This document shows, piece after piece, positions 1 to 21,041 of a stretch of DNA of 64,000 bases. The notes under the pieces were generated by a model. The model was not told where the DNA came from. It saw only the letters and a list, made by a program, of their open reading frames with translations, and did no database searches. Positions within the stretch are counted from its first letter, which is position 1. Every line of letters starts with the position of its first letter. A program made the position numbers and the translations under genes. Where the stretch lies: positions 1 to 64,000 of the IMG/VR virus record IMGVR_UViG_3300034012_003212; one strand, written 5' to 3'.

Positions 1-207
1 TCAAGGTCTTCAGGGATTGCAGGGAACTCAAGGAACTCAAGGAACCCAAGGTCTTCAGGGTCTTCAGGGTCTTCAGGGTCTTCAAGGTCTTCAGGGATTG
101 CAGGGAACTCAAGGAACTCAAGGAACCCAAGGTCTTCAGGGTCTTCAGGGTCTTCAGGGTCTTCAAGGTCTTCAGGGATTGCAGGGAACTCAAGGAACTC
201 AAGGAAC
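1..207 (+). repeat. Perfect 81-bp tandem repeat (about 2.5 copies) within collagen coding region
   Basis: Identical sequence restarts at 1, 82 and 163; the first mismatch is at 208. Confidence 0.9.
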
Positions 208-7688: not shown

Positions 7689-7886
7689 ATGGACTTAGAG
7701 AATGCTAATGTTAAGATTTTTAACTTCTTGCGCACCTCTGTGTGTAACTCCGTGTATGACTCCATATGGGACCCCAGAAGGGACTCCACATGGGACTCCG
7801 TATGGGACTCCTTGAGGAATCCCGTGTTGGACTCCGTTGTTATTAGATTACAGGAACCCATAAGAGAAGAAAGGAAACGAGGATGA
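7689..7886 (+). CDS. SVxx array unit 1 (65 aa)
   Basis: MDLENA head; start reassigned from 7530. Confidence 0.7.
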   Translation: MDLENANVKIFNFLRTSVCNSVYDSIWDPRRDSTWDSVWDSLRNPVLDSVVIRLQEPIREERKRG

Positions 7887-8086
7887 ACTTAAAGAATATT
7901 GATATTAAGATTGGTAGGTCCATGCGGATCTCCGTGGAAAAATCCGCGTGGAACTACGTGTTGGACTCCGTGAGGCACTCCGAGTGGAATTCCGTGTGGT
8001 GGTCCGTGAGTTACTACGTGGAGAATTCCGCGTTGGACTCCGTGAATGATGGACTACAAAGACTCATAAGACAAGAAAGGAAATAA
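7883..8086 (+). CDS. SVxx array unit 2 (67 aa)
   Basis: MNL head, SVxx core, ATGA overlap. Confidence 0.75.
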   Translation: MNLKNIDIKIGRSMRISVEKSAWNYVLDSVRHSEWNSVWWSVSYYVENSALDSVNDGLQRLIRQERK

Positions 8087-8088
8087 GG

Positions 8089-8283
8089 ATGAACTTAGAG
8101 AATGTTAACTATAAGATCTGTGATTCTGCGTATGTATCCTCGTGGAACTCTGTGAGGGGCTCTGTGGTGGTCTCCGTGTGGAACTCTGTGAGTAACTCCG
8201 TGAGTAACTCCGTGAATGATAGACTACAAGAACCCATAAGAGAAGAAAGAGGAAGCGAAGATGAACTTAGAGAATGTTGGTAA
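8089..8283 (+). CDS. SVxx array unit 3 (64 aa, shifted tail)
   Basis: Tail runs 23 nt into unit 4. Confidence 0.7.
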   Translation: MNLENVNYKICDSAYVSSWNSVRGSVVVSVWNSVSNSVSNSVNDRLQEPIREERGSEDELRECW

Positions 8284-8455
8284 AAATATAGAATTCGCAT
8301 CGATCTCCATGGAAAACTTCGCGTTGGGCTCCGTATGGGACTCCTCTATGTACTACTCCATATGTGACTCTGTGAATTTCTTCGTGGAAAACTCAGTGGA
8401 AAACTCAGTGAATTTTAGACTACAGCAACCCATAAGACAAAAAAAACAGGGATGA
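8261..8455 (+). CDS. SVxx array unit 4 (64 aa)
   Basis: Head, core and tail present. Confidence 0.75.
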   Translation: MNLENVGKNIEFASISMENFALGSVWDSSMYYSICDSVNFFVENSVENSVNFRLQQPIRQKKQG

Positions 8456-8646
8456 ACTTAAAGGATGTTGAAGATAAGATTGAGGAGTCTGTGTCATACC
8501 CGTTGCACTCCGTGAGGGACTCCGTGAGGAATTCCATTAGCAACTCCATATGGCCCTCCAATTGGTACTCCGTGTGGAACTCCGTGGGGGGCTCTGTGAA
8601 TATTGGACTAAAAGGATCCATAAGAAAAGAAAGGAAACGAGGATGA
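8452..8646 (+). CDS. SVxx array unit 5 (64 aa)
   Basis: Head, core and tail; ATGA overlap. Confidence 0.75.
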   Translation: MNLKDVEDKIEESVSYPLHSVRDSVRNSISNSIWPSNWYSVWNSVGGSVNIGLKGSIRKERKRG

Positions 8647-8855
8647 ACTTAGAGAATGTTGGTAGGAAGATTTGGGATTACCCTAGGTCAGACTATATGT
8701 TGAACGATGTGTTTGATTGTGTGTATGGATCCGCCTTTACCTTCGCGCGGGACTCCGCGTCCGGTTTCGGGAGGGACTCTGTGTTTGAACCCGCGTGGGA
8801 ATCCGTGTATTATGGAGTGCAAGAACCCATAAGACAAGAATGGGAACAAGAATGA
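8643..8855 (+). CDS. SVxx array unit 6 (70 aa)
   Basis: Internal start of track ORF 8550-8855. Confidence 0.75.
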   Translation: MNLENVGRKIWDYPRSDYMLNDVFDCVYGSAFTFARDSASGFGRDSVFEPAWESVYYGVQEPIRQEWEQE

Positions 8856-9061
8856 ACTTAGAGAATGTTGATAATAAGATTGGTAAGTCCGTGGAGAACT
8901 CCGTTTTGGGCTCCGTGTGGAACTCCGTGTGGAACTCAATGGAGGACTCTGCGGGGAACTCCGTATGGTGCTTTGTGGGGGACTCTGTGGAGGACTCTGT
9001 GCAGAATGGACTACAAGAATCCATAAGAGAAGAGAGAAAACGAAAGAGGAAACGAGGATGA
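8852..9061 (+). CDS. SVxx array unit 7 (69 aa)
   Basis: Identical to unit 21. Confidence 0.75.
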   Translation: MNLENVDNKIGKSVENSVLGSVWNSVWNSMEDSAGNSVWCFVGDSVEDSVQNGLQESIREERKRKRKRG

Positions 9062-9267
9062 ACTTAGAGAATGTTAATTATAAGATCTGTGATTCTGCGT
9101 ATGTATACTCGTGGAGCTCCGTGAGGGACTCTGCGTGGAACTCTGTGATGGACTCCGTGTGGGGGGTGGTGTGGGCATCCGTGGATCATCCCATGAGTAA
9201 CTCCGTGGGGGACTCTGTGGATTTTGGACTACAAAGACCCATACGAGAAGAAAGGAGTCAGGGATGA
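9058..9267 (+). CDS. SVxx array unit 8 (69 aa)
   Basis: 5' part nearly identical to unit 3. Confidence 0.75.
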   Translation: MNLENVNYKICDSAYVYSWSSVRDSAWNSVMDSVWGVVWASVDHPMSNSVGDSVDFGLQRPIREERSQG

Positions 9268-9482
9268 ACTTAGAGAATGTTGGATATATGAGTGTGAATT
9301 ATGTGAGTGACTTGGTGAGTTTATCCATGAGAGACTCCGCGTGGAACTCCGTGTGGGACTTTTTGAGGGACTCCGTGGGGAACTCTGTGAGGGACTCTGT
9401 GGTGGTCTCCGTGTGGAACCCCGTGTGGGACTCCGTGAATATTGGACTACAAGAACCCATAAGAGAAGAAAGGGGCCGGTAA
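9264..9482 (+). CDS. SVxx array unit 9 (72 aa)
   Basis: TAA stop abuts the next ATG. Confidence 0.75.
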   Translation: MNLENVGYMSVNYVSDLVSLSMRDSAWNSVWDFLRDSVGNSVRDSVVVSVWNPVWDSVNIGLQEPIREERGR

Positions 9483-9692
9483 ATGAACTTAGAGAATGTT
9501 AGAGATAAGATTGGGAACTCCGTGAGTATCTCCGTGAATAACTCCGTGTGGTTGTCCGTGTGGAACTCCGTGGATAACACCATGTGGAACTCCGTGAGGA
9601 ACTCCGTGTATTTCTCCATGGGGAACTCCGTGAGAAACTCCGTGAATTTTAGACTACAAAGACCCATACGAGAAGAAAGGAGTCAGGGATGA
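9483..9692 (+). CDS. SVxx array unit 10 (69 aa)
   Basis: Head, core and tail present. Confidence 0.75.
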   Translation: MNLENVRDKIGNSVSISVNNSVWLSVWNSVDNTMWNSVRNSVYFSMGNSVRNSVNFRLQRPIREERSQG

Positions 9693-9874
9693 ACTTAGAG
9701 AATGTTAAAGATAATATTATGAACTCCGTGAGGAACTCCGTGTATTTCTCCGTGGGGAACTCCGTGTGGGACTCCGTGTGGTACTCCGTGTGGCGCTCCA
9801 CGCAGAACTCCGTGAGGAAGTCCGTGGATATTGGACTAACAGAACCCATACTACGAGAAAGGAGACGAAGATGA
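9689..9874 (+). CDS. SVxx array unit 11 (61 aa)
   Basis: ATGA overlap. Confidence 0.75.
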   Translation: MNLENVKDNIMNSVRNSVYFSVGNSVWDSVWYSVWRSTQNSVRKSVDIGLTEPILRERRRR

Positions 9875-10077
9875 ACTTAAAGAGTATTGAGGATGAGATT
9901 CATTCATGGATTGACTCCGTGGAGAGTTCCCTGAAAAACTCCATGTGGAATTACGTGTGTATTTACAGGTCGTATTCCGTGTGCGACCCCGTGTATAGCT
10001 TTGTTGAGAACTCTGTGCGGGATTCTGTTTATATTAGAATACAAAGACCTATAATAGAAGAATTAAAACGAAGATGA
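9871..10077 (+). CDS. SVxx array unit 12 (68 aa)
   Basis: ATGA overlap. Confidence 0.75.
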   Translation: MNLKSIEDEIHSWIDSVESSLKNSMWNYVCIYRSYSVCDPVYSFVENSVRDSVYIRIQRPIIEELKRR

Positions 10078-10250
10078 ACTTAAAGAATGTTGAAAATATG
10101 ATTTGGGAATCCGTGAGGGACTCCTTGTGGTATCCCATGCGGATATCTATATCAAACTCCGTGAAAAAGTCCGTGTGGGTCTCCGCTAGGGAATCTGTTT
10201 ATTATGGAGGAATACAACTACCCATAGCACGAGAAAGGAGACGGGGATGA
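10074..10250 (+). CDS. SVxx array unit 13 (58 aa)
   Basis: Hand translated; below track cutoff. Confidence 0.75.
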   Translation: MNLKNVENMIWESVRDSLWYPMRISISNSVKKSVWVSARESVYYGGIQLPIARERRRG

Positions 10251-10444
10251 ACTTAGAAGATGTTGGTAGGAAGATTGGGGGCTCCATGGATGACTTCGTG
10301 ATGAACTCCGTGTGGTGGTCCGTGGCCAACTCCGTGTGGAACTCCGTGTGGAACTCCGTGTACAACCCCGTGTGGAACTTTGTGAGGAACTCGGTGTATG
10401 ACGGAATAAAACTACCCATAAGAGTAGAGAGGAAACGAAGATGA
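10247..10444 (+). CDS. SVxx array unit 14 (65 aa)
   Basis: ATGA overlap. Confidence 0.75.
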   Translation: MNLEDVGRKIGGSMDDFVMNSVWWSVANSVWNSVWNSVYNPVWNFVRNSVYDGIKLPIRVERKRR

Positions 10445-10650
10445 ACTTAGAGCATGTTGAAAATAAGATTCGGGATTTTGTAAATATCTCAGTGGGGTTT
10501 TCTGTACAGGAATTTGCGTGGAACACCATGACTAAACCCGCGTGGTATTCCATATGGTGCCCCGCGTATAGCTCTGTGGAGAACTCCATGTGGGACTCCG
10601 TGAATATTGGACTACAAAAACCTGTAAGAGAAGAAAGAAAACAAAGATGA
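10441..10650 (+). CDS. SVxx array unit 15 (69 aa)
   Basis: ATGA overlap. Confidence 0.75.
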   Translation: MNLEHVENKIRDFVNISVGFSVQEFAWNTMTKPAWYSIWCPAYSSVENSMWDSVNIGLQKPVREERKQR

Positions 10651-10820
10651 ACTTAGTGCATGTTGGACATAAGATTGTGAAGTCCGTGGAGAACTCCGTG
10701 TGGAACTCCGTGTGGAACTCCGTGTGGAACTCCGTGAGGTTCTCCGTGTGGGACTCCGTTTTGGACTCCGTGAAGACTAGACTACAATTACCCATAAGAG
10801 AAGAAAGGGTACAGGGATGA
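10647..10820 (+). CDS. SVxx array unit 16 (57 aa)
   Basis: ATGA overlap. Confidence 0.75.
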   Translation: MNLVHVGHKIVKSVENSVWNSVWNSVWNSVRFSVWDSVLDSVKTRLQLPIREERVQG

Positions 10821-11011
10821 ACTCAGAGAATGTTAGTGGGAAGATTTGGAAGTTTCGGAGCTCCGTAGATAACTCCGTGTGGAACTTCGTGTGGAACTCT
10901 GTGAGGTTCCCCGGGAGGAACTCGGTGAGGGACTCTGTGAGGAACTCCGTGTGGGACTCTGTAAATATTGGACTAAAAGAACCCATAAGAGAAGAGAGGA
11001 AACAGGGATGA
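10817..11011 (+). CDS. SVxx array unit 17 (64 aa)
   Basis: ATGA overlap. Confidence 0.75.
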   Translation: MNSENVSGKIWKFRSSVDNSVWNFVWNSVRFPGRNSVRDSVRNSVWDSVNIGLKEPIREERKQG

Positions 11012-11193
11012 ACTTAGAGAGGGTTGAAGATAAGATTTGGGGCTACGTAGAGTATTCCGTATGGATATCTGTGGATAAACTTGTGTGGGACTCCGTGTGG
11101 TACTCCGTGTTTGACTCTGTATGGAACTCCGTAAGGGACTCTGTGAATTTTAGACTCCAAGAACCCATAAGAGAAGAGATGAAACAAAGATGA
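11008..11193 (+). CDS. SVxx array unit 18 (61 aa)
   Basis: ATGA overlap. Confidence 0.75.
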   Translation: MNLERVEDKIWGYVEYSVWISVDKLVWDSVWYSVFDSVWNSVRDSVNFRLQEPIREEMKQR

Positions 11194-11387
11194 ACTTAGA
11201 GAATGTTGGAAATAAAATTAGAACAAACGTATGGTATTATGAGTGGGGACATAGTTTCAACTATGCTAATGAATCGTTAGGACGTTCCATATATTTATCT
11301 GTTTATGCCCACATCTTTGATGGCATATTGAACTCTTTATATATTAGACTCCGAGAACCCATAATAGCACAAAAGAAACAGGTATGA
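11190..11387 (+). CDS. SVxx array unit 19 (65 aa, diverged non-repetitive core)
   Basis: Head and tail conserved, core unique. Confidence 0.75.
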   Translation: MNLENVGNKIRTNVWYYEWGHSFNYANESLGRSIYLSVYAHIFDGILNSLYIRLREPIIAQKKQV

Positions 11388-11581
11388 ACTTAGAGAATGC
11401 TAGAGATAAGATTGCGAACTCATTGTGGAAATCCGTGGAGGGTCCTGTGTGTACCTCCACGGGGAAATCCGTGCAGGACGATGGGTGGTTCCCCCTGATG
11501 ACCTCCGTGTGGAACTCCGTGAGGGACTCAGTGGATATTGGACTAACAGAACCCATAAGAAAAGAAAGGAAACAAGGATGA
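11384..11581 (+). CDS. SVxx array unit 20 (65 aa)
   Basis: ATGA overlap. Confidence 0.75.
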   Translation: MNLENARDKIANSLWKSVEGPVCTSTGKSVQDDGWFPLMTSVWNSVRDSVDIGLTEPIRKERKQG

Positions 11582-11787
11582 ACTTAGAGAATGTTGATAA
11601 TAAGATTGGTAAGTCCGTGGAGAACTCCGTTTTGGGCTCCGTGTGGAACTCCGTGTGGAACTCAATGGAGGACTCTGCGGGGAACTCCGTATGGTGCTTT
11701 GTGGGGGACTCTGTGGAGGACTCTGTGCAGAATGGACTACAAGAATCCATAAGAGAAGAGAGAAAACGAAAGAGGAAACGAGGATGA
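11578..11787 (+). CDS. SVxx array unit 21 (69 aa)
   Basis: Identical to unit 7. Confidence 0.75.
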   Translation: MNLENVDNKIGKSVENSVLGSVWNSVWNSMEDSAGNSVWCFVGDSVEDSVQNGLQESIREERKRKRKRG

Positions 11788-11981
11788 ACTTAGAGAATGT
11801 TAATTATAAGATTGGGAACTCGGTGAGGGACTCTGTGAACAACTCCTTGTGGAACTCCGTGTGGGACTCTGTGTTTAACCCTGTGAGGTACTCTGTATGG
11901 GATTCTGTGAATGACTCCATGGGGAGCTCTGTGAATATTGGACTAAAAGGATCCATAAGAAAAGAAAGGAAACAAGGATGA
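11784..11981 (+). CDS. SVxx array unit 22 (65 aa)
   Basis: Tail shared with unit 5. Confidence 0.75.
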   Translation: MNLENVNYKIGNSVRDSVNNSLWNSVWDSVFNPVRYSVWDSVNDSMGSSVNIGLKGSIRKERKQG

Positions 11982-12175
11982 ACTTAGAGCCGATTGATAA
12001 CAAGATTTGGATCTCCATACGGGACTCCGTGGATAACACCGTGCGGAACTCCGTGAATAAATCCGCGTGGAACCACGTAAGTTTCTTCGTGTGGAACTCC
12101 GTTTTGGACTCCGTGTGGATCTCTGTGAATATTGGACTACAAAACCCCATAAGAGAAGAGAGGAAACAGGGATGA
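11978..12175 (+). CDS. SVxx array unit 23 (65 aa)
   Basis: ATGA overlap. Confidence 0.75.
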   Translation: MNLEPIDNKIWISIRDSVDNTVRNSVNKSAWNHVSFFVWNSVLDSVWISVNIGLQNPIREERKQG

Positions 12176-12378
12176 ACTTAGAGAGTATTGAGGATGAGAT
12201 TCATTCATGGATTGACTCCGTTTCGGGCTCCATGTGGAAACCTGTGTGGGATTATATGTTGTACTCCGCGAGGGGCTCCGTGTGGGCCTCCGTGATGGAC
12301 TCCGCTGGGGACTATGTGGAGGACTCTGTGCAGAATGGACTACAAGAACACATAAGAGAAGAAAGGGCCGGTAAATGA
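12172..12378 (+). CDS. SVxx array unit 24 (68 aa)
   Basis: Head shared with unit 12. Confidence 0.75.
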   Translation: MNLESIEDEIHSWIDSVSGSMWKPVWDYMLYSARGSVWASVMDSAGDYVEDSVQNGLQEHIREERAGK

Positions 12379-12581
12379 ACTTAGAGAATGTTGATAAACC
12401 ATATTTTCACATTGTAGATAACACCCTATGGAATCGTGTGTACTCAGTATGGAAATCGTCATTAACAGTTTCCTCACATAATTTCGTGCGTGATTCTGTA
12501 GATATATCCATGAGATCTGTACAACTCTCGTTGCACGAGGGCGTATTAAGACCCGTAAGAGAAGAAAGAAAACAAGGATGA
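12375..12581 (+). CDS. SVxx array unit 25 (68 aa, diverged core)
   Basis: Head and tail conserved. Confidence 0.75.
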   Translation: MNLENVDKPYFHIVDNTLWNRVYSVWKSSLTVSSHNFVRDSVDISMRSVQLSLHEGVLRPVREERKQG

Positions 12582-12739
12582 ACTTAGAGGATGTTGGATA
12601 TAAGATCGGTGATTCTGTGTGTGTATCCGTGTGGTATTCTGTGAGTGACTATGCGTGGAACTCTGTGCAGGACTCCATAAAGGACCTTGCGTATAATGGG
12701 CTAAAAGAACCCATAAGAGAAGATAACAAACAAAGATGA
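12578..12739 (+). CDS. SVxx array unit 26 (53 aa)
   Basis: Hand translated. Confidence 0.75.
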   Translation: MNLEDVGYKIGDSVCVSVWYSVSDYAWNSVQDSIKDLAYNGLKEPIREDNKQR

Positions 12740-12909
12740 ACTTAGAGAATGTTGGAACTAAGGTTTGGGGCTCCGTGTGGAACTCCATGAGGTTCTTCGA
12801 GAGGGACTCCATGTGGGACTCCGTGAGGGACTCTATGTATAACTCCGTGTGGGACTCCGTGTTCGATGGGTTACAACTACCAATAAGAAAAGAGGGGAAA
12901 CAAGGATGA
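12736..12909 (+). CDS. SVxx array unit 27 (57 aa)
   Basis: Hand translated; head shared with unit 31. Confidence 0.75.
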   Translation: MNLENVGTKVWGSVWNSMRFFERDSMWDSVRDSMYNSVWDSVFDGLQLPIRKEGKQG

Positions 12910-13103
12910 ACTTAGAGAATGTTAAAGATAGGATTTGGTACTCCGTGGGGAACTCCGTGAGTGACCCCATGCGGAAATCCGTGTGGGACTTTTTGAGGGA
13001 CTCCGTGAAGTATCCTGTGTATAACTCCGTGGTGGTCTCCGTGTGGGACTCCGTGGATATTGGACTACAAGAACCCATAAGAGAAGAAAGGGCACAGGGA
13101 TGA
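12906..13103 (+). CDS. SVxx array unit 28 (65 aa)
   Basis: ATGA overlap. Confidence 0.75.
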   Translation: MNLENVKDRIWYSVGNSVSDPMRKSVWDFLRDSVKYPVYNSVVVSVWDSVDIGLQEPIREERAQG

Positions 13104-13270
13104 ACTTAGAATCGGTTGGTGTGAAGATAAGAGACACCGTGTGGAACTCCGTGTGGCCCTCCAATTGGTACTCCGTGTGGAACTCCGTGTTTGACCCCGT
13201 GAGGAACTCCGTGTGGGACTCCTTGAATATTGGACTACAAGAACCCATAAGAGAAGAAAGGGGCCGGTAA
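13100..13270 (+). CDS. SVxx array unit 29 (56 aa)
   Basis: Core shared with unit 33. Confidence 0.75.
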   Translation: MNLESVGVKIRDTVWNSVWPSNWYSVWNSVFDPVRNSVWDSLNIGLQEPIREERGR

Positions 13271-13528
13271 ATGAACTTAGAGAATGTTGGACATAAGATT
13301 TGGGGCTCCGTGTGGAACTCCATGAGGAAATTCGTGGGTATCTCCGTGAGGGTCTCTGCGTGGAAATCTGTGAGGTACTCCATGGGTATCTCCGTGGGAG
13401 ACTCTGTGTGGGACTCCGTGAAGGGCTCCGTGGGGGTCTCCGTGTTGAACTCTGTGTATGGAATACAAGACGCAATAAGAGAAGAAAGATTCAACAATGA
13501 GGCGGCACAAAAAAATATTTTTTTTTGA
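13271..13528 (+). CDS. SVxx array unit 30 (85 aa, tail broken by inserted module)
   Basis: Junction motif is cut after GAAGAAAG (13488); the frame runs on into promoter DNA. Confidence 0.7.
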   Translation: MNLENVGHKIWGSVWNSMRKFVGISVRVSAWKSVRYSMGISVGDSVWDSVKGSVGVSVLNSVYGIQDAIREERFNNEAAQKNIFF

Positions 13529-13551
13529 AAGTAGGATTGTGTATGTTTGCA
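13509..13551 (+). promoter_or_regulatory. Bacteroidota-type promoter P1 upstream of DUF6745-like gene
   Basis: A7-TA-T9-G, then TATGTTTG at 13542-13549. Confidence 0.7.
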
Positions 13552-13613
13552 TAGATATTTTTTCCAGGGAATATGAACCTGATTTGACATCAAGATTTTT
13601 TTAGTTTTCCAAT

Positions 13614-13653
13614 AAAATATTTTTTTTTGAAATCAGAAGTACGTATATTTGCA
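13614..13653 (+). promoter_or_regulatory. Bacteroidota-type promoter P2 upstream of DUF6745-like gene
   Basis: A4-TA-T9-G, then TATATTTG at 13644-13651; same spacing as P1, 102 bp downstream. Confidence 0.7.
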
Positions 13654-13699
13654 GAGGGTATAACCTCACAGTTTTTACAACTTTTTAAGGATAGCCATT

Positions 13700-14692
13700 A
13701 TGGCAAAAAAATATTCACCAAGCAATCCGCTTGAGAAACTCACTCCTGAAATGGAGGCGCTCATCCCAGTCGTCAGGGATGAATGGATTAACCGAGCATA
13801 CAAAGGGTTGAATCCAAATGATATTGACGAGAAGAAGGTGAAGAGTGCTGTACATTGGATATACAAAAAATCGGACTTGCCCAAGCCGATGGTCATCATA
13901 ACGGATTCGCCAAAAGCTGCTCAAGATGCAGCAAATGAATTGTATAAGAAGCATGTTGACCCATCAGCAAAGCGTCAGTATTTTCCATTTTCTGACAGTC
14001 TTTCTGTATCCGACTTCCGCTGGGTTGCATTCTATGATTACTTCACCCGCATTGGCGTCTTGCAAGACAAGACATTCAATAAATACATGGAGTACACAAA
14101 ACTTGGCATTTATGACACAATCAAACTTCACGATGTTTGTATTGTTGTGAAAATGCCTGAGTATGTTAAATCCACTATTGTGCGTGATGTTCGCGTCCCG
14201 CACAGTGAGGATTCTCCTGCTGTTAAGTTCATTGATGGTGATTCTTATTATTTCTGGAATGGTACATTGGTTCCGGAGAAATGGATCATGCGCAAAGACG
14301 AGATCACACAGAATGATATCATCTCAGAAGACAATGCCGAAAAGCGTCGTTGTCTCATGGAAATCCTTGGAGCAAAGAGGTATTATGACATCATCTCTGA
14401 TGGAAAGGGTCTTAAACTCATTGACGAGGACACAGACAATCAGGGATTCCCTATGAGATTGTATGAGACAACAAAGAATGATTCTATCGTCAACAAAAAG
14501 GTTCAATTCCTTGAAGTGACTGATCCATCAACAGGGCGAGTGTATAACATCTACCCTCCTAATCAGAATGCAAAGAATGTATGGGATGCGAAGGCACAGA
14601 CATTCAGTTCTGAGAAATTGTACGTCCGTCAGGGTGATGTTGGACTGACGAAGATAGGATACGATGAAGCGCATCCTGTGCAAGAAACATAA
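13700..14692 (+). CDS. DUF6745-like protein (330 aa)
   Basis: KLTPE.EALIP..RDEWI, DSP, W.AFYDYF, YFWNG..VPE.WI, I..E.NAEKRRCLME.LG, V.DPSTGR.Y...P and C-terminal RQGDV motifs. Confidence 0.7.
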   Translation: MAKKYSPSNPLEKLTPEMEALIPVVRDEWINRAYKGLNPNDIDEKKVKSAVHWIYKKSDLPKPMVIITDSPKAAQDAANELYKKHVDPSAKRQYFPFSDSLSVSDFRWVAFYDYFTRIGVLQDKTFNKYMEYTKLGIYDTIKLHDVCIVVKMPEYVKSTIVRDVRVPHSEDSPAVKFIDGDSYYFWNGTLVPEKWIMRKDEITQNDIISEDNAEKRRCLMEILGAKRYYDIISDGKGLKLIDEDTDNQGFPMRLYETTKNDSIVNKKVQFLEVTDPSTGRVYNIYPPNQNAKNVWDAKAQTFSSEKLYVRQGDVGLTKIGYDEAHPVQET

Positions 14693-14709
14693 TGTAATTT
14701 TTATAGTAT

Positions 14710-14718
14710 AATATATAC
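14710..14718 (+). promoter_or_regulatory. Candidate late-promoter motif (AATATATAC)
   Basis: ATATATA motif upstream of 14752; AGGAG at 14742-14746. Confidence 0.4.
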
Positions 14719-14751
14719 ACCTAATTAACTTTTTTTTCAATAGGAGATTTT

Positions 14752-15048
14752 ATGGATAAGTCAGAAAGAATCCGCAGAGTGATTGCTCGTGGTGAGCATT
14801 CCAACCATTCACATGTTGTGTGTGGTGATGATGTAACAATTCGTGAAGAGAAGGGCACAATTTTTGTCACAGTTGGCAATAGTGGTGCAGTTCTTCGTCA
14901 CTTGCTTGAGATGGAGTACATCGAAACAGGCAAGGAAGTATGGACAAAGGAACATGAAGATGTGCCGCTTCCTCAGGGTGAATATAAATTTGTTCCCCAG
15001 ATTGAGTACAATCCGCTCGATGAAACCATCCAAAGAACAAAGGACTAA
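14752..15048 (+). CDS. Small His-motif beta protein, usual DUF6745 partner
   Basis: ARGE.SNHSH...LRH...EHEDVPLPQGEYK..PQIEYNP......KD resembles the GE.tGHaH/HeEH..i.lp.G.Y...Q.EY partner family (recalled). Confidence 0.7.
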   Translation: MDKSERIRRVIARGEHSNHSHVVCGDDVTIREEKGTIFVTVGNSGAVLRHLLEMEYIETGKEVWTKEHEDVPLPQGEYKFVPQIEYNPLDETIQRTKD

Positions 15049-15075
15049 TCATATTAGTTCAAAAGATTGGTACAT

Positions 15076-15109
15076 AAAAATGGCACGCCTTAAACGTGCC
15101 ATTTTTTTT
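15076..15109 (+). terminator. Intrinsic terminator (possibly bidirectional)
   Basis: A5-TGGCACG-CCTTAAA-CGTGCCA-T8. Confidence 0.85.
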
Positions 15110-15125
15110 AACAGAGGAAACAAAG

Positions 15126-15323
15126 ATGAACTTAGAGAATGTTGGAACTAAGGTTTGGGACTCCATGTGGAACTCCATGAGGTTCTTCGAGAGGGACTCC
15201 ATGTGGGACTCCGTGTGGAACTCCGTGTGGGGTTCCGTAAGGGTCTCCGTGTGGGACTCTGTGTGGGATTCTGTTTATATTAGAATACAAAGACCTATAA
15301 TAGAAGAATTAAAACGAAGATGA
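15126..15323 (+). CDS. SVxx array unit 31 (65 aa)
   Basis: Preceded by the 3' half of a junction motif. Confidence 0.75.
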   Translation: MNLENVGTKVWDSMWNSMRFFERDSMWDSVWNSVWGSVRVSVWDSVWDSVYIRIQRPIIEELKRR

Positions 15324-15505
15324 ACTTAGAGAATGTTGGATATGAGATTTGGAAATCCGTGAGTTCCTCCGTGAGGAACTCTGTGGATGACTCCGCGTGG
15401 AACTCCGTGTGGGGTTCCGTGAGGGTCTCCGTGTGGGACTCTGTGCGGGATTCTGTTTATATTAGAATACAAAGACCTATAATAGAAGAATTAAAACGAA
15501 GATGA
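15320..15505 (+). CDS. SVxx array unit 32 (61 aa)
   Basis: Tail shared with units 12 and 31. Confidence 0.75.
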   Translation: MNLENVGYEIWKSVSSSVRNSVDDSAWNSVWGSVRVSVWDSVRDSVYIRIQRPIIEELKRR

Positions 15506-15723
15506 ACTTAGAGATTGTTGAAGATAAGATTTGGAGCTCCGTGGAGTATTCCGTGTGGATCTCTATGGATAAAATCGTGTGGAACTCCGTGTGGCCCTCC
15601 AATTGGTACTCCGTGTGGAACTCCGTGTTTGACCCCGTGAGGAACTCTGTGATGGACCCTGTGAGGGACTCTGTTTATGGTGGATTACAAATACCCATAA
15701 GACAAGAAAGGGAACGAGGATGA
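15502..15723 (+). CDS. SVxx array unit 33 (73 aa)
   Basis: ATGA overlap. Confidence 0.75.
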   Translation: MNLEIVEDKIWSSVEYSVWISMDKIVWNSVWPSNWYSVWNSVFDPVRNSVMDPVRDSVYGGLQIPIRQERERG

Positions 15724-15905
15724 ACTTAGAGAATGTTAAAGATAAGATTTGGAACTCCGTGAGGAACTCCGTGTATTTCTCCATGAAGAACTCCATGAGG
15801 AAATCTGCATGGAACTCCGTGATGGGCTCTGTGTGGGCCTTTGTGTGGGACTCTGTTTATGGTGGACTACAAGAACCCATAAGAGAAGAAAGGAGACAAG
15901 GATGA
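15720..15905 (+). CDS. SVxx array unit 34 (61 aa)
   Basis: ATGA overlap. Confidence 0.75.
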   Translation: MNLENVKDKIWNSVRNSVYFSMKNSMRKSAWNSVMGSVWAFVWDSVYGGLQEPIREERRQG

Positions 15906-16108
15906 ACTTAGAGCAGGTTGAATATAAGATTGGTAACTCCTTGTATGACTCCAAGTGGAACTCTGTGAGGTTCTCCGTGAGGAACTCCGTGTGGAAGTCC
16001 CTGTTGAGCGTGTGGGACTCCGTGTGGAAATCCGTGTTGGTCTCCGTGAGGGACTCTGTGCAGAATGGACTAAAAAACCCCATAAGAGAAGAATGGGGGC
16101 AAGAATGA
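15902..16108 (+). CDS. SVxx array unit 35 (68 aa)
   Basis: ATGA overlap. Confidence 0.75.
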   Translation: MNLEQVEYKIGNSLYDSKWNSVRFSVRNSVWKSLLSVWDSVWKSVLVSVRDSVQNGLKNPIREEWGQE

Positions 16109-16302
16109 ACTTAGATCTGGTTGGTGGGAAGATTTGGGATTCCATGTTGAACTCCGTGTGGGAATCCGTGTGGAACTCCGTGTTTGACTCCGTGAGGGAC
16201 TCTGTGGGGGGCTCCGTGAAGTATTCCGCATGGAACTCCGTGTGGGACTCTGTGAAAGTTGGACTACAAGAACCCATAAGAGAAGAAAGGAAACGAGGAT
16301 GA
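16105..16302 (+). CDS. SVxx array unit 36 (65 aa)
   Basis: ATGA overlap. Confidence 0.75.
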   Translation: MNLDLVGGKIWDSMLNSVWESVWNSVFDSVRDSVGGSVKYSAWNSVWDSVKVGLQEPIREERKRG

Positions 16303-16484
16303 ACTTAGAGCATGTTGAATATAAGATTGGTAACTCCGTGTATGACTCCATGTGGAACTCTGTGTGGGGTTCCGTGAGGGTCTCCGTGTGGGACTCCGTG
16401 GTGGTTTCCGTGGCGTATTTTGTGGGGGACTCCGTGAATATTAGACTACAGATACCCATAAGACAAGAAAGGGAACAGGAATGA
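16299..16484 (+). CDS. SVxx array unit 37 (61 aa)
   Basis: ATGA overlap. Confidence 0.75.
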   Translation: MNLEHVEYKIGNSVYDSMWNSVWGSVRVSVWDSVVVSVAYFVGDSVNIRLQIPIRQEREQE

Positions 16485-16735
16485 ACTTAGAGCCGGTTGA
16501 ATATAAGATTGGTAACGCCGTGTATGACTCCAAGTGGAACTCTGTGAGGTTCTCCGTGTGGAACTCCGTGTGGAAGTCCCTGTTGAGCGTGTGGGACTCC
16601 GTGTGGAAATCCGTGTTGGTCTCCGTGAGGGACTCTGTGGGGGGCTCCGTGAAGTATTCCGCATGGAACTCCGTGAGGGATTCTGTGTATTTTGGACTAA
16701 CAGAACCCATAAGACAAGAAAGGAAACGGGGATGA
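16481..16735 (+). CDS. SVxx array unit 38 (84 aa, chimera of units 35 and 36)
   Basis: 5' core matches unit 35 and 3' core matches unit 36. Confidence 0.75.
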   Translation: MNLEPVEYKIGNAVYDSKWNSVRFSVWNSVWKSLLSVWDSVWKSVLVSVRDSVGGSVKYSAWNSVRDSVYFGLTEPIRQERKRG

Positions 16736-16851
16736 ACTTAGAGCATGTTGGTAGAAAGATTTGGGAATCCTTGAAGAACTTTGCGTGGGATTTTGTGGGC
16801 ATTGGACACAAAAACACCCATAAGACGAGAAAGAGAAAAATGGGGACGAGG
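16732..16851 (+). pseudogene. SVxx array unit 39, shortened and frameshifted, fused in frame to unit 40
   Basis: GGACACAAAAACACCCAT has one extra nt versus canonical GGACTACAAGAACCCAT; no stop before 17025. Confidence 0.65.
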
Positions 16852-17025
16852 ATGAACTTAGAGAATGTTGGTAGGAAGATTGATATCCGCATGTGGTTCT
16901 CCGTGAGGATATCCGCGGAGAACCACACATTAAACTCCGTGGATATCTTCGTGTATTTCCCCGTGAGGGACTCTGTGTATGATGGAATACAACTACCCAT
17001 AAGAGAAGAAAAGAAACAAGGATGA
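16852..17025 (+). CDS. SVxx array unit 40 (57 aa)
   Basis: Own ATG at 16852. Confidence 0.7.
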   Translation: MNLENVGRKIDIRMWFSVRISAENHTLNSVDIFVYFPVRDSVYDGIQLPIREEKKQG

Positions 17026-17177
17026 ACTTAGAGAATGTTGGATATAAGATTTGGGATTTCGCGCCCATCCGATTGGAACAACCCACATGGTACTCTGTGA
17101 TGGAACCTGTGAATATTAGACTAATACAATCCATAAGTAACGAAAGGGAACACGAAGATGAACTTAGAGAGTGTTAG
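17022..17177 (+). CDS. SVxx array unit 41 (51 aa, shifted tail)
   Basis: Hand translated; overlaps unit 42 by 20 nt. Confidence 0.65.
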   Translation: MNLENVGYKIWDFAPIRLEQPTWYSVMEPVNIRLIQSISNEREHEDELREC

Positions 17178-17355
17178 TTGGAAGATTTCAAGATGTGTAC
17201 ATTCTTATGTGTATATTCCTGCTGAAAGTTTCATATTGAACTCCGTGAATGTCTCACGTTGGATTTCTATATGGGATTTTACTATGGATCCGTTATTACA
17301 ATCGGTTAACAACAGGATACAAACGCATATAAGACAAGAAAGGGGACGGGGATGA
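17158..17355 (+). CDS. SVxx array unit 42 (65 aa, diverged core)
   Basis: Head and tail conserved. Confidence 0.75.
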   Translation: MNLESVSWKISRCVHSYVYIPAESFILNSVNVSRWISIWDFTMDPLLQSVNNRIQTHIRQERGRG

Positions 17356-17486
17356 ACTTAGAGAATGTTAAAGATAAGATTTGGAACTCCGTGAGGAACT
17401 CCGTGGAGATTTCCGTGTGGGACTCTGTGGGAAAATCTGTGGATGGACTACACGGATCCATAATAAAAGAAAGGGAACAGGGATGA
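17352..17486 (+). CDS. SVxx array unit 43 (44 aa)
   Basis: Hand translated. Confidence 0.7.
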   Translation: MNLENVKDKIWNSVRNSVEISVWDSVGKSVDGLHGSIIKEREQG

Positions 17487-17689
17487 ACTTAAATGCTTTT
17501 ACTACAAATAATATAAAGGTGAGTAACTTCATGTGGAACTCCGTAGCGGACTCCGTGTGGAACTCCGTGTTGAACTCCGTGGAGATTTCCGTGTGGGGCT
17601 CCGTGTATAACTCCGTGAGGGACCCTGTGTGGAACTCTGTTTATGATGGACTTCAAGAACCCATAAGAGAAGAAAGGAAAAAAAGATGA
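17483..17689 (+). CDS. SVxx array unit 44 (68 aa)
   Basis: ATGA overlap. Confidence 0.75.
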   Translation: MNLNAFTTNNIKVSNFMWNSVADSVWNSVLNSVEISVWGSVYNSVRDPVWNSVYDGLQEPIREERKKR

Positions 17690-17883
17690 ACTTAGAGAAT
17701 GTTGAAGATAAGATTTGGGAATCCGTAGGGAACTCCGTGTGGGACTCCGTGGTGGTCTCCGTGAGGGAGTCCGTGGTGGTCTCCGTGAGGGGCTCTGTGG
17801 CGTATTCTATGGGGTACTTTGTGGCGAACTCCATGGATATTGGACTGCAAGAACCCATAAGAGAACAAAGGGAAAGAAGATGA
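17686..17883 (+). CDS. SVxx array unit 45 (65 aa)
   Basis: ATGA overlap. Confidence 0.75.
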   Translation: MNLENVEDKIWESVGNSVWDSVVVSVRESVVVSVRGSVAYSMGYFVANSMDIGLQEPIREQRERR

Positions 17884-18065
17884 ACTTGGCGTATGTTGGT
17901 ATTGAGATTGGGGACTACGTGATGGTCTCCGCGCTGGAGTCCGTGAGGATTTTCGTGCCAGACTCTGTAAGTGAGTCTGTGGATGACTTCGTGTGGGTCT
18001 CCTTGAGGGCCTCCGTGAATTTTAGACTACAAAGACCCATACGAGAAGAAAGGAGTCAGGGATGA
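17880..18065 (+). CDS. SVxx array unit 46 (61 aa)
   Basis: ATGA overlap. Confidence 0.75.
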   Translation: MNLAYVGIEIGDYVMVSALESVRIFVPDSVSESVDDFVWVSLRASVNFRLQRPIREERSQG

Positions 18066-18296
18066 ACTTAGAGAATGTTAGTGTTAAGATTTGGAACTCC
18101 GTGTGGTGGTCCGTGGGAAACTCCGTGTGGGTCTCCATGCGGGACTTTTTGAGGAGGGATTCCGTGGGGAACTCTGTGAGGGACTCCGTGGTGGTCTCCG
18201 TGAGGGACTCCGTGGATCTCCGTGAGGAACTCTGTATATAACTCAGTGGATTTTAGACTACAAGAACCCATAAGACAAGAAAGGAGACAGGGATGA
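18062..18296 (+). pseudogene. SVxx array unit 47, frameshifted
   Basis: Frameshift near GTGGATCTCCGT (~18215) gives TAA at 18239-18241; the tail motif is intact in another frame. Confidence 0.7.
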
Positions 18297-18487
18297 ACTT
18301 AGAGAATGTTAAAGATAAAATTTGGAACTCCGTGAGGAACTCCGTGTATATCTCCATGGAGAACTCCGTGTGGTACTCCATGAGGAAATCTGCATGGAAC
18401 TCCGTGAGGAACTCTGTGTGGGACTTTGTGTGGGACTCTGTGGATGGACTACAAGAACCCATAAGACAAGAAAGGAGACAGGGATGA
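18293..18487 (+). CDS. SVxx array unit 48 (64 aa)
   Basis: Close to unit 34. Confidence 0.75.
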   Translation: MNLENVKDKIWNSVRNSVYISMENSVWYSMRKSAWNSVRNSVWDFVWDSVDGLQEPIRQERRQG

Positions 18488-18621
18488 ACTTAGAGAATGT
18501 TAGAGATAGGATTTGGTACTCCGTGAGGAACTCCGTGATGGGCTCTGCGAGGATCTCTGTGAGGGATTCTGTGTATTTTGGACTAACAGAACCCATAAGA
18601 CAAGAAAGGAGACAGGGATGA
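18484..18621 (+). CDS. SVxx array unit 49 (45 aa)
   Basis: ATGA overlap. Confidence 0.75.
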   Translation: MNLENVRDRIWYSVRNSVMGSARISVRDSVYFGLTEPIRQERRQG

Positions 18622-18791
18622 ACTTAGAGAATGTTAGAGATAGGATTTGGTACTCCGTGAGGAACTCCGTGTATTTCTCCATGGAGAACTCCGCGGGGTA
18701 CTCCGTGGATAAATCCGTGAGGGACCCTGTGAGGGACTCTGTGGATTTTGGACTAGCAGCACCCATAAGACAAGAAAGGAGACAGGGATGA
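18618..18791 (+). CDS. SVxx array unit 50 (57 aa)
   Basis: Head identical to unit 49. Confidence 0.75.
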   Translation: MNLENVRDRIWYSVRNSVYFSMENSAGYSVDKSVRDPVRDSVDFGLAAPIRQERRQG

Positions 18792-18979
18792 ACTTAGAGA
18801 ATGTTAGAGATAAAATTTGGAACTCCGTGGATACCCCCGTGTGGCACTCCGTTTTGGACTCTGTGAATAACTCCTTTTTCTTGAGGGAATCCGTGTGGAA
18901 CTCTGCGAGGAACTCCGTGTGGAAGTCTGTGAATACTGGACTACAGTACCTAATAAGACGAGAAAGGGAACAGGAATGA
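18788..18979 (+). CDS. SVxx array unit 51 (63 aa)
   Basis: ATGA overlap. Confidence 0.75.
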   Translation: MNLENVRDKIWNSVDTPVWHSVLDSVNNSFFLRESVWNSARNSVWKSVNTGLQYLIRREREQE

Positions 18980-19158
18980 ACTTAGAGAATGTTAGAGATA
19001 TGATTTGGTACATAGGAGACGATGTTTTCTCGAGATTTGTTAAAATCCTCTGGTACCCGCCAGCAGAATCAGGGTATCAAAACATATTGACTCCTATGTG
19101 TGACTGCTTATACAATAGACTACAGACATCTATAAGACACCAAAGATGGCTCGGATGA
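18976..19158 (+). CDS. SVxx array unit 52 (60 aa, diverged core)
   Basis: Head conserved, core unique. Confidence 0.7.
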   Translation: MNLENVRDMIWYIGDDVFSRFVKILWYPPAESGYQNILTPMCDCLYNRLQTSIRHQRWLG

Positions 19159-19280
19159 ACTTAGATAATATTTGGAAATCCATGAGGCGTTCCGTGGATA
19201 AATCCATGAATAACTCCGCGTGGAACTCCGTGAATTTTAGACTGCAAAACCCCGTAAGACGAGAAAGAAGACATGGATGA
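19155..19280 (+). CDS. SVxx array unit 53 (41 aa)
   Basis: Hand translated; shortest intact unit. Confidence 0.7.
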   Translation: MNLDNIWKSMRRSVDKSMNNSAWNSVNFRLQNPVRRERRHG

Positions 19281-19474
19281 ATTTAACTGATGTTGATGGT
19301 ATAACCCAACATTTCATATGGCGTCTTATTACACGGCCCGCATGGGATTCTATTGTGAATTTTACAGGTGGATCCATGAGATCAGTTGATCACCCGGTGA
19401 AGGAATCGGTATGTAAAAGTCTACAAATGAAAATAAGATTCAACGTGCCGGTGGTAAAAATTCTATCGGATTAA
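19277..19474 (+). CDS. SVxx array unit 54 (65 aa, highly diverged)
   Basis: MNLTDV head with ATGA overlap. Confidence 0.6.
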   Translation: MNLTDVDGITQHFIWRLITRPAWDSIVNFTGGSMRSVDHPVKESVCKSLQMKIRFNVPVVKILSD

Positions 19475-19538
19475 TTCAATGGCGCCGTGTTAGATAATTT
19501 ATTGATATGATTTGTTTGTTAAAAAAAAGGAAATAGTC

Positions 19539-19760
19539 ATGAATTTACAAAACGCTGATTGTTTAAATGGATCAGTATTAGAATCCATTCTAAAATCTTG
19601 TTTTAGTTCCATCGAGAAACCTTTAGTGGAAATCACTTTGAGTTCAGTCGACCCCAAGATGTTAGAATATATTTGGGAAAACACGAGAGGAATGTTGTGG
19701 AACTCTGTTCTTTTAAGATTACAAAATCCAATAAGGGACGATTTCGCTACCAAAATTTAG
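19539..19760 (+). CDS. SVxx array unit 55 (73 aa, highly diverged terminal copy)
   Basis: MNLQNA head and WNSVLLRLQNPIR tail. Confidence 0.6.
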   Translation: MNLQNADCLNGSVLESILKSCFSSIEKPLVEITLSSVDPKMLEYIWENTRGMLWNSVLLRLQNPIRDDFATKI

Positions 19761-20990: not shown

Positions 20991-21009
20991 GAGGAAATTT
21001 GTATTTTTG
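20972..21009 (+). promoter_or_regulatory. Bacteroidota-type promoter
   Basis: A7T5 tract, then TATTTTTG at 21002-21009. Confidence 0.55.
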
Positions 21010-21041
21010 CCCATGTATTTGAAACTATACGGGATCGTGCA

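What the first reader, a model, noticed from the sequence alone, without database searches (positions are those of the whole stretch)
15902..16735. Unit 38 is a clean recombinant of units 35 and 36, crossing over in a shared 12-bp module
Seen: unit 38 carries unit 35's core (DSKWNSVRFSV.NSVWKSLLSVWDSVWKSVLVSVRDSV) followed directly by unit 36's GGSVKYSAWNSV. The switch lies in CCGTGAGGGACTCTGTG, which both parents share. Inference: the 12-bp modules act as crossover points that create new combinatorial variants, possibly through the phage's UvsW/UvsY/gp32 recombination machinery.
Basis: partly seen in the sequence, partly recalled or inferred. Interest (0 to 1): 0.7.

Follow-up and report, generated by a model that had tools for sequence, protein, structure and literature searches.

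The report
Mosaic mini-gene in a phage array
One small gene in a 12-kb run of about 55 repeated mini-genes of a lake phage is a real patchwork of three neighbouring mini-genes. This shows the run reshuffles itself by recombination, which is expected for tandem repeats, though the gene run itself is undescribed.

Summary
Unit 38 (16481-16735) matches unit 35 at 134/138 bases up to 16618; the next-best place in the array has 40 mismatches. A 19-nt stretch follows (16621-16639) that occurs only in units 35, 36 and 38. Then comes a 36-nt patch (16640-16675) identical to unit 36; the next best has 8 mismatches.

It is not a clean two-parent product. Bases 16676-16715 are identical to unit 49, while unit 36 has 8-9 mismatches there. 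The two switches give Fisher p = 6e-19 and 2e-6.

It is not an assembly artefact. An independent 135-kb assembly is identical over 6.2 kb, and contigs from other lake runs bridge the junction. One strain carries the junction about 25-45 nt further upstream.

Which unit gave and which received cannot be resolved. Other chimeras occur in this array and in a related phage, so module-phase exchange is general here.

The genome encodes a RecA-family (UvsX-like) protein, a gp32-like SSB and a helicase. Their role in this event is inference only.

The units are about 65-aa predicted single helices built of 4-residue x-S-V-x repeats. They flank a DUF6745 gene, and a complex model docks the unit's conserved tail on that protein (0.86 against 0.00 in controls).

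The process is ordinary. The array is uncharacterised.

The parts
7689..13528 (+). First half of the tandem array (units 1-30). Each unit is about 195 bp: head MNLENV..KI, a run of 12-nt (x-S-V-x) modules, and tail GLQEPIREERKQG.
   Evidence: 45 of 53 unit junctions are ATGA stop/start overlaps. Median unit length is 65 aa.
13700..14692 (+). DUF6745 protein (330 aa), sitting in the middle of the array.
   Evidence: Pfam PF20530, E = 4e-11. AF2 model pLDDT 92 with no fold match. The same position in the array is seen in the related phage L002.
14752..15048 (+). 98-aa ORF, a conserved neighbour of DUF6745 genes.
   Evidence: Homologues lie next to DUF6745 in L002, L019, L020 and L021.
15126..19760 (+). 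Second half of the tandem array (units 31-55).
15902..16108 (+). Unit 35. Its first 159 nt are 97.5% identical to unit 38. Its tail (from 16061) has no close copy in the array.
16042..16060 (+). Copy of the 19-nt shared stretch in unit 35.
16105..16302 (+). Unit 36. Its head has no close copy. It carries the 19-mer (16188-16206) and the GGSVKYSAWNSV patch (16207-16242).
16299..16484 (+). Unit 37. Its head (first 60 nt) resembles the heads of u35 and u38. The rest is of another type.
16481..16620 (+). Unit 38, tract 1: u35-like (4 mismatches in 138-140 nt).
16621..16639 (+). Unit 38: the 19-nt stretch identical in u35, u36 and u38. This is the interval of the first switch.
16640..16675 (+). Unit 38, tract 2: 36 nt identical to u36 16207-16242.
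   Evidence: 0 mismatches; next best 8.
16676..16715 (+). Unit 38, tract 3: 40 nt identical to the u49 tail (18562-18601).
16716..16750 (+). End of unit 38 and first 19 nt of unit 39. Closest to the u36/u37 junction (1 mismatch), but u5/u6 has only 2, so this is not diagnostic.
18484..18621 (+). Unit 49, which carries the tail type found in unit 38.

Best explanation
Unit 38 is a real, in-frame mosaic gene. It was made by homologous (homeologous) exchange between paralogous units of a tandem array of about 55 translationally coupled mini-genes in a 260-kb T4-like lake phage.

Shown: unit 38 consists of three tracts.
- A u35-type head and core.
- A 36-57-nt u36-type patch, joined to the first tract through a 19-nt stretch identical in both.
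- A 40-nt u49-type tail.

Inferred: the modules are in-phase 12-nt repeats (x-S-V-x). Strand invasion or template switching in any register that is a multiple of three therefore keeps the frame and yields a new helix of different length and residue pattern.

The most economical history is as follows. A copy of the adjacent u35-u36 pair lost the 146 nt between its two 19-nt direct repeats, or equivalently a u35-type unit received a 48-nt patch from u36. A short conversion tract from a u49-type tail came before or after. I favour u38 as the recipient, at about 0.6, but the polarity is not resolved.

The enzymes are presumably the phage's own RecA-family (UvsX-like) recombinase, its gp32-like SSB and its helicase. 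This is inference only.
For: - Tract identities and their uniqueness.
- Switch statistics: p = 6e-19 and 2e-6.
- The 19-mer occurs only in u35, u36 and u38.
- u35 and u36 are adjacent. Removing 16061-16206 (146 nt, which compensates the -1 frame offset between units) reproduces the front of u38.
- Every part of u38 has a near-identical copy elsewhere. The u35 tail and u36 head (16058-16154) have none, with 16-17 mismatches in 75-78 nt to the best donor.
- It is not an artefact. ENA contig L015 is identical over 13105-19302. A JGI contig from another sample has the same gene layout, including the 84-aa unit. Run X4's contig 16560-16698 bridges the junction with no differences, and run X3's 302-nt contig covers 16423-16724.
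- Exchange is ongoing. X3's copy carries the four u36 states at 16597, 16609, 16618 and 16620, so its junction lies upstream. X9's u35 has the u38 base at 15980. In X6 a u35-type unit comes first after the leader.
- The pattern is general. There are other two-donor units, u7 = u21, and shuffled order plus a u45/u43 chimera in phage L002.
- Recombination genes are present.
Against: - Polarity is unresolved. Three transfers out of u38 explain the data as well as three transfers into it.
- No reciprocal crossover product is present.
- The flank upstream of u38 is not specifically u34-like: 5 mismatches in 27 nt, and other units match better. u39 is not clearly a copy of u37 beyond 19 nt. A simple three-unit tandem duplication is therefore not demonstrated.
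- The second switch has almost no exact homology.
- No outgroup copy of the u35, u36 or u38 types was found in other phages.
- Population evidence rests on Logan contigs of k = 31, not on raw or long reads.
Confidence: 0.85

Rival explanations
1. Reverse polarity. Unit 38 is an old unit. Unit 35 is a copy of it that lost 48 nt between its two SVRDSV modules and took another tail. Units 36 and 49 received short conversion tracts from unit 38. This is still intra-array recombination, but u38 is the donor and not the product.
For: - u38 carries two SVRDSV modules as direct repeats flanking exactly the 48 nt that u35 lacks.
- In u36 the SVRDSV module, which normally ends a unit, is internal. u36 therefore also looks modified.
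- In run X9, a unit has part of the patch plus the u38 tail behind a different upstream sequence.
Against: - It needs u35's tail to have been replaced by a type with no surviving donor.
- In run X5, a contig carries u35 tail, u36 head and the patch, while the u35/u38 core has zero depth. This suggests the patch exists in u36 without u38. The evidence is weak: depth is about 3, and a hole proves nothing.
- u38 is the second-longest unit (84 aa against a median of 65), as expected for an insertion or fusion product.
Confidence: 0.3
2. Programmed diversification. The array is a cassette library, like vls or pilS silent cassettes or a DGR, and a dedicated mechanism copies segments between units at the SVRDSV module.
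For: - The units have conserved ends and a variable middle.
- Both switches in u38 lie at SVRDSV modules.
- pN/pS is about 1.2 among recently related tracts.
- The array always flanks a DUF6745 gene and a 98-aa gene of unknown function.
Against: - There is no reverse transcriptase in the genome.
- Every unit has its own ATG, and 41 of 55 have an SD-like motif. No separate expression site is visible.
- Breakpoints of other chimeras are not confined to one motif.
- The DUF6745 model has no fold match to any nuclease or recombinase.
Confidence: 0.07
3. Assembly chimera. The short-read assembler jumped between u35 and u36 through the shared repeat and invented unit 38.
For: - The array is highly repetitive.
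- Logan contigs fragment at every shared stretch.
- The JGI 84.8-kb contig starts inside the array.
Against: - Identical sequence is found in an ENA assembly, and another sample has the same layout.
- X4's contig bridges 80 nt of u35-type core and 59 nt of patch plus tail without a difference.
- X3's variant unit is covered end to end by one 302-nt contig.
- u38 has its own diagnostic bases (16494, 16517, 16520, 16559) and a tail that neither 'parent' has.
Confidence: 0.03
4. Chance or convergence. Independent slippage of common 12-nt modules produced the same strings in different units.
For: The modules are few in type and are homogenised at the DNA level: TCC makes up 62% of Ser codons and GTG 71% of Val codons.
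Against: The shared tracts consist of rare modules (KSLLSVW, GGSVKYSAW) found nowhere else in the array. The next-best matches have 40/138 and 8/36 mismatches.
Confidence: 0.01

Closest known systems
Gene conversion and unequal crossing-over in tandem multigene families (concerted or birth-and-death evolution; general knowledge)
   Same: Near-identical tracts are shared by otherwise divergent paralogues. Junctions lie in shared sequence. Whole-unit duplicates exist (u7 = u21). Copy order and number differ between strains.
   Different: The units here are whole mini-genes of about 195 bp that are themselves built of 12-nt in-phase repeats. Exchange can therefore occur in many registers, and it changes protein length in 4-residue steps.
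Segmental gene conversion from silent cassettes (Borrelia vls, Neisseria pilS; from my own knowledge)
   Same: The product is a mosaic of short tracts taken from several donors. Conserved ends flank a variable middle.
   Different: There is no single expression site and there are no promoterless cassettes. Each unit has its own start codon, and most have an SD-like motif. No dedicated machinery was identified.
Recombination between intragenic tandem repeats of surface or coiled-coil proteins, such as streptococcal M and alpha-C proteins (from my own knowledge)
   Same: In-frame gain or loss of repeat blocks between short direct repeats. u38 gained 48 nt (four modules) relative to u35.
   Different: The exchange here is between separate genes of an array, and not only within one gene.
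Poxvirus 'gene accordions' (from my own knowledge)
   Same: A virus carries a tandemly amplified gene that then diversifies.
   Different: This array is large (about 55 units), old enough to be about 40% divergent at the protein level, and stable enough to be identical in separate assemblies.
DUF6745 proteins with an internal 4-residue repeat region (Pfam PF20530)
   Same: They have the same kind of x-polar-hydrophobic-x tetrapeptide repeat, such as NQVW, SELY or GNNI. There is also genomic linkage: the array flanks a DUF6745 gene.
   Different: In the window the repeats are in stand-alone 45-85-aa ORFs with their own conserved head and tail, and the DUF6745 protein has no repeat insert. One repeat-less DUF6745 gene elsewhere (L019) has no array within the 12.5 kb read.

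Membership tests
Recombinant (mosaic) member of a tandem gene array | Adjacent tracts are each near-identical to a different paralogue, and those paralogues are unlike each other there. | tested here: met
   4/138 mismatches against 40 for the next best, and 0/36 against 8. Informative sites 42:0 then 0:25.
Recombinant (mosaic) member of a tandem gene array | The switch interval lies in sequence shared by both parents. | tested here: met
   A 19-nt identity at 16621-16639 = 16042-16060 = 16188-16206. These are the only three copies in the array.
Recombinant (mosaic) member of a tandem gene array | The structure exists in nature and is not an assembly artefact. | tested here: met
   Support comes from contigs and assemblies only, with no raw or long reads.
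Recombinant (mosaic) member of a tandem gene array | The mosaic unit is the derived one (polarity). | tested here: inconclusive
   No outgroup copies were found. The parsimony arguments are about even.
   16676-16715 is 40/40 identical to u49, with 8-9 mismatches to u36.
Reciprocal unequal crossover | The reciprocal chimera (u36 head + u35 tail) or a clear multi-unit duplication is present. | tested here: not met
   The u36 head and u35 tail have no close copy. u39 is not clearly a copy of u37.
Silent-cassette antigenic variation (vls/pilS type) | One expression site plus promoterless, start-less donor cassettes. | tested here: not met
   All units start with ATG, 45 of 53 junctions are ATGA overlaps, and 41 of 55 units have an SD-like motif.
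Diversity-generating retroelement | A reverse transcriptase with a template/variable repeat pair. | tested here: not met
   No RVT_1 match in the 260-kb genome. The control genomes rang.
T4-type recombination system (UvsX/UvsY/gp32/UvsW) | The genes are present in this genome. | tested here: inconclusive
   A RecA-family hit at G000 249319-249885 lies over the cut-off. A gp32-like SSB and a helicase are in the window. The UvsY Pfam model gave no hit, but it also rang in no control.
T4-type recombination system (UvsX/UvsY/gp32/UvsW) | These proteins made the u38 junction. | not testable with these tools
   This needs genetics in an isolate.
DUF6745-linked tetrapeptide-repeat helices | A 4-residue x-polar-hydrophobic-x repeat selected at the protein level. 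| tested here: met
   There are 354 S-[VMA] dipeptides in the units. A distant member encodes the S-V pair as AGC GTG rather than TCC GTG. AF2 predicts one long helix.
DUF6745-linked tetrapeptide-repeat helices | The repeat region lies inside a DUF6745 polypeptide. | tested here: not met
   The window's DUF6745 protein has no repeats, and the units are separate ORFs.

The most novel reading that the evidence does not exclude
The array, the DUF6745 gene and the 98-aa gene may form one system. In it, about 55 alternative helical 'arms' dock by their conserved C-terminal tail on a common DUF6745 scaffold. This would be a split version of DUF6745 proteins that carry the repeat helix internally. 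Module-phase recombination, as caught in unit 38, would then be the engine that keeps producing new arms, for example in an arms race with host defences or receptors.
Probability: 0.2. Interest if true: 0.75.

Novelty: new member of a known kind. Interest (0 to 1): 0.4.

Why it matters
By itself, unit 38 is a textbook-style mosaic. Its value is as a dated, well-resolved example, with three tracts at 0-2.5% divergence. It shows that this uncharacterised phage array is being reshuffled now, in frame and in 4-residue steps, and differently in co-existing lake strains.

This makes the array a candidate fast-evolving protein library. Its function could be approached through its conserved neighbour DUF6745, for which no paper was found in the library I searched.

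Tried and rejected
- Megablast of the region against GenBank phages found no match.
- Pattern scans of IMG/VR for the unit junction and for the KSLLSVW marker found nothing.
- The degenerate marker scan of JGI metagenome contigs returned only 7 chance hits in unrelated genes.
- The search for related loci with the DUF6745 alignment or the single protein in IMG/VR gave no usable pattern and no relative.
- MAFFT alignment of the four units hides the signal, because it aligns the u36 patch against other modules. I used fixed-register comparisons and a jumping alignment instead.
- Pfam and PHROGs gave nothing for the units.
- Rfam found nothing in the array.
- Promoter and terminator scans were not above shuffled controls.
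- No RNA run was listed.
- Fold searches of the DUF6745 model in PDB and Swiss-Prot found no match.
- The 'split versus fused DUF6745' idea is not supported by the one test case: L019 has a repeat-less DUF6745 and no array within the 12.5 kb read.
- The three-unit tandem-duplication model is not demonstrable: u39 matches u37 only for 19 nt plus scattered bits.

Full report
WHERE THE WINDOW COMES FROM

The window is the first 64 kb of a 260,658-bp single-contig virus record (G000, GC 41.6%). The record is NCBI GCA_043531265.1 JBFDBI010003367.1, which equals JGI 3300034012 Ga0334986_0000005. It comes from a lake metagenome, and CheckV estimates 88% completeness.

The genome encodes a gp32-like SSB, a helicase and a baseplate wedge protein, and a RecA-family protein at 249 kb. 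Its gp32 is at most 37% identical to anything in GenBank phages; the best hits are uncultured huge phages. I read it as a divergent T4-like phage.

THE ARRAY

From 7689 to 19760 on the + strand lie about 55 tandem mini-genes, with a median length of 65 aa. Each unit has three parts:
- a head, MNLENV..KI;
- a run of 12-nt modules encoding x-S-V-x (typically N/D-S-V-W/R);
- a conserved tail, GLQEPIREERKQG.

45 of 53 unit junctions are ATGA stop/start overlaps.

The array is interrupted at 13529-15125. That gap holds a DUF6745 gene (13700-14692), a 98-aa gene (14752-15048) and a hairpin followed by a T-run.

Are the units coding?
- For coding: the unit frame has no stops, while the other two frames have 165 and 81.
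- For coding: a distant family member encodes the same S-V pairs with AGC GTG instead of TCC GTG, so the dipeptide is selected at the protein level.
- Within the array the modules are homogenised at the DNA level. TCC is 62% of Ser codons against 13% in the genome, and GTG is 71% of Val codons against 24%.
- Recently related tracts differ with pN/pS of about 1.2. That fits relaxed or diversifying change at the x positions.

AlphaFold2, run with the paralogue alignment, predicts one long helix for unit 38: residues 6-83, mean pLDDT 75. Pfam, PHROGs and Rfam give nothing for the units. The ESM Atlas places them in unnamed, purely viral clusters.

CHECKING THE OBSERVATION

- u38 16481-16639 matches u35 15902-16060 at 155/159.
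- u38 16619-16675 matches u36 16186-16242 at 57/57.
That 19-mer occurs only three times in the array, in these three units.

Hamming scans over the whole array show how specific this is:

| u38 segment | best match | next best |
|---|---|---|
| 16481-16618 (138 nt) | u35, 4 mismatches | 40 mismatches |
| 16640-16675 (36 nt) | u36, 0 mismatches | 8 mismatches |

At sites where u35 and u36 differ, in fixed registers, u38 sides 42:0 with u35 up to 16620 and 0:25 from 16621 to 16675 (Fisher p = 6e-19).

The tail is not u36's.
- A jumping alignment against the whole array, with a switch costing five mismatches, gives u38 = 140 nt of u35 (4 mismatches) + 52 nt of u36 (0) + 63 nt of u49 (2).
- 16676-16715 is 40/40 identical to u49 18562-18601. 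u36 has 8-9 mismatches there and ranks fifth among all places.
- Informative sites for u36 against u49 are 21:0 before 16676 and 2:9 after it (p = 2e-6).
- The last 35 nt (16716-16750, the tail end plus the next unit's first 19 nt) are again closest to the u36/u37 junction, with 1 mismatch. u5/u6 has only 2, so this stretch is not diagnostic.

The second switch lies at another SVRDSV module. u36 and u49 share only a few bases exactly there. This points to a short conversion tract or a template switch rather than a crossover in a long identity.

IS IT AN ASSEMBLY ARTEFACT? NO.

- An ENA contig of 135 kb (L015) is identical to the window over 13105-19302.
- A JGI contig of 84.8 kb from another sample has the same gene layout, including the 84-aa unit.
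- Among Logan contigs from four different studies, X4's 139-nt contig covers 16560-16698 with no difference. It joins 80 nt of u35-type core to 59 nt of patch plus u49-type tail.
- X1 has exact contigs at 16367-16639 and 16673-16875.
- X3 has a single 302-nt contig over 16423-16724.

STRAIN VARIATION

- X3's copy of u38 differs at seven places. Four of them (16597, 16609, 16618, 16620) are exactly the u36 states, so in that strain the u35/u36 junction lies about 25-45 nt further upstream.
- X9's u35 has the u38 base at 15980.
- In X6, a u35-type head follows directly on the leader that precedes unit 31 in the window.
- X5 has a contig with u35 tail, u36 head and the patch, but no depth on the u35/u38 core. 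The depth is low and a hole proves nothing.

Exchange among these units is therefore ongoing in lake populations.

THE PATTERN IS GENERAL

- u7 and u21 are identical over 210 nt.
- u31 = u27 head (89 nt, 2 mismatches) + u32 tail (109 nt, 2 mismatches).
- u29 = u33 (75 nt, 2 mismatches) + u9 (62 nt, 1 mismatch).
- u12 ends with 68 nt identical to u32.
- A related phage (L002, a 66-kb contig) has a smaller array around its own DUF6745 gene. It shares some units at 97-100% identity (u39-u40, u43-u44, u45), but in another order and with other neighbours. It also has its own chimera of a u45 head on a u43 body.

HISTORY AND POLARITY

u35 and u36 are adjacent. Deleting the 146 nt between their two 19-mers puts the u36 3' part in frame with the u35 5' part, because the units are offset by -1. 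This reproduces the front of u38.

The parts of u35 and u36 that u38 lacks (16058-16154) have no close copy anywhere. Every part of u38 does. At 84 aa, u38 is the second-longest unit. This favours u38 as the derived unit.

The opposite reading needs the same number of events: u38 is old, u35 is a 48-nt deletion derivative between u38's two SVRDSV modules, and u36 and u49 received tracts from it.

Other limits on the history:
- No reciprocal chimera exists.
- The upstream flank is not specifically shared.
- u39 matches u37 only for 19 nt.
- No outgroup copies were found in other phages.

I put u38-as-recipient at about 0.6. The existence of recombination does not depend on this.

MECHANISM

Shown: there are three tracts, two switch intervals at SVRDSV modules, and the frame is kept.

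Inferred: pairing happens between homeologous 12-nt-periodic sequence in a shifted register, followed by crossover or deletion between the 19-nt direct repeats, or by short-patch conversion.

The phage has the genes for a RecA-family recombinase, an SSB and a helicase. UvsY was not found, but the search was not validated, because the controls were silent. There is no reverse transcriptase, so this is not a DGR. There is no separate expression site, so it is not a vls/pilS-type cassette system.

CONTEXT THAT MAY MATTER

DUF6745 proteins elsewhere often carry an internal tetrapeptide-repeat region of variable length (NQVW.., SELY.., GNNI..) between their N- and C-domains. The window's copy has none, but it sits in the middle of the array.

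A complex model of DUF6745 with unit 38 scored 0.86 (median ipSAE of three runs). The best of 3 controls scored 0.00.
- In calibration, this mark was reached by 58 of 80 solved complexes and by 2 of 110 mismatched pairs.
- The three runs agree in 42%, 0% and 39% of their contacts.
- The partner's pLDDT is at least 52.
- I supplied my own alignments, so the calibration counts hold only roughly.
- The interface is unit residues 59-84, which is the conserved tail.

This supports binding as a hypothesis only.

The DUF6745 model itself (pLDDT 92) has no fold match. The 98-aa gene is a conserved neighbour of DUF6745 in four other phage contigs. One of those contigs has a repeat-less DUF6745 and no array within the 12.5 kb read, so a simple 'split versus fused' rule is not supported. 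No paper mentions DUF6745 in the library I searched.

VERDICT

The process is the known one of homologous exchange in a tandem family, so the novelty is 'new member of a known kind'. The array it acts on is uncharacterised and is the more interesting object.

Noticed in passing
window 13700-15048: A DUF6745 gene and a 98-aa gene (motif IARGEHSNHSH) sit in the middle of the array. The pair is conserved in four other phage contigs (L002, L019, L020, L021). A complex model docks the conserved tail of unit 38 on the DUF6745 protein (0.86 against a best control of 0.00).
   Followed up: partly
window 8822-9086 and 11548-11812: A 265-nt duplicate at 98.5% identity. Units 7 and 21 are identical over their full 210 nt, so a whole unit was copied 2.7 kb away.
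   Followed up: partly
window 16732-17025, 8089-8283, 17022-17177 and 18062-18241: Damaged units. u39 is a 120-nt stub whose frame runs on into u40. u3 and u41 have shifted tails that read ..EDELREC into the next unit. u47 lacks the normal tail and is followed by a 51-nt gap. Not every unit is kept intact.
   Followed up: no
L002 3232-3477 (related phage, JGI 3300042554 contig of 66 kb): A unit with the head of window unit 45 (55 nt identical) joined to the body of unit 43 (97% identity). Shared units lie in a different order than in the window.
   Followed up: partly
window 15082-15109: A G+C-rich hairpin followed by eight T, right after the 98-aa gene and before unit 31. It looks like an intrinsic terminator, so the second half of the array would need its own promoter.
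   Followed up: no
window 7689-19760: Codon use in the array is unlike the rest of the genome. Array against genome: TCC 62% vs 13% of Ser, GTG 71% vs 24% of Val, AAC 68% vs 40% of Asn, GC 45-46% vs 41.6%. Long ORFs in the other frames and on the minus strand (for example 12922-13593, 223 aa) are by-products of the repeats.
   Followed up: partly
window 17-1474: An ORF with long collagen-like G-x-y repeats (Pfam Collagen, E = 3e-27) built of 9-nt tandem repeats.
   Followed up: no
window 19842-21560: Directly downstream of the array lie a 382-aa protein with a phosphoribosyltransferase domain and a cpYpsA (SLOG) protein. The same two genes follow the array in the JGI 84.8-kb contig.
   Followed up: no
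window 26332-26866: Three blocks of 63-nt tandem repeats (72-80% matches) inside the minus-strand ORF 26221-27183.
   Followed up: no
proteins P0043, P0048, P0054, P0058, P0089 and locus L016: Other metagenomic proteins of about 135 aa carry the same SVWDSVRDSV-type repeats in front of a different conserved C-terminal domain (..SFDGKTWRLH..). In L016 the gene lies in a phage-like context with a DNA methyltransferase.
   Followed up: partly
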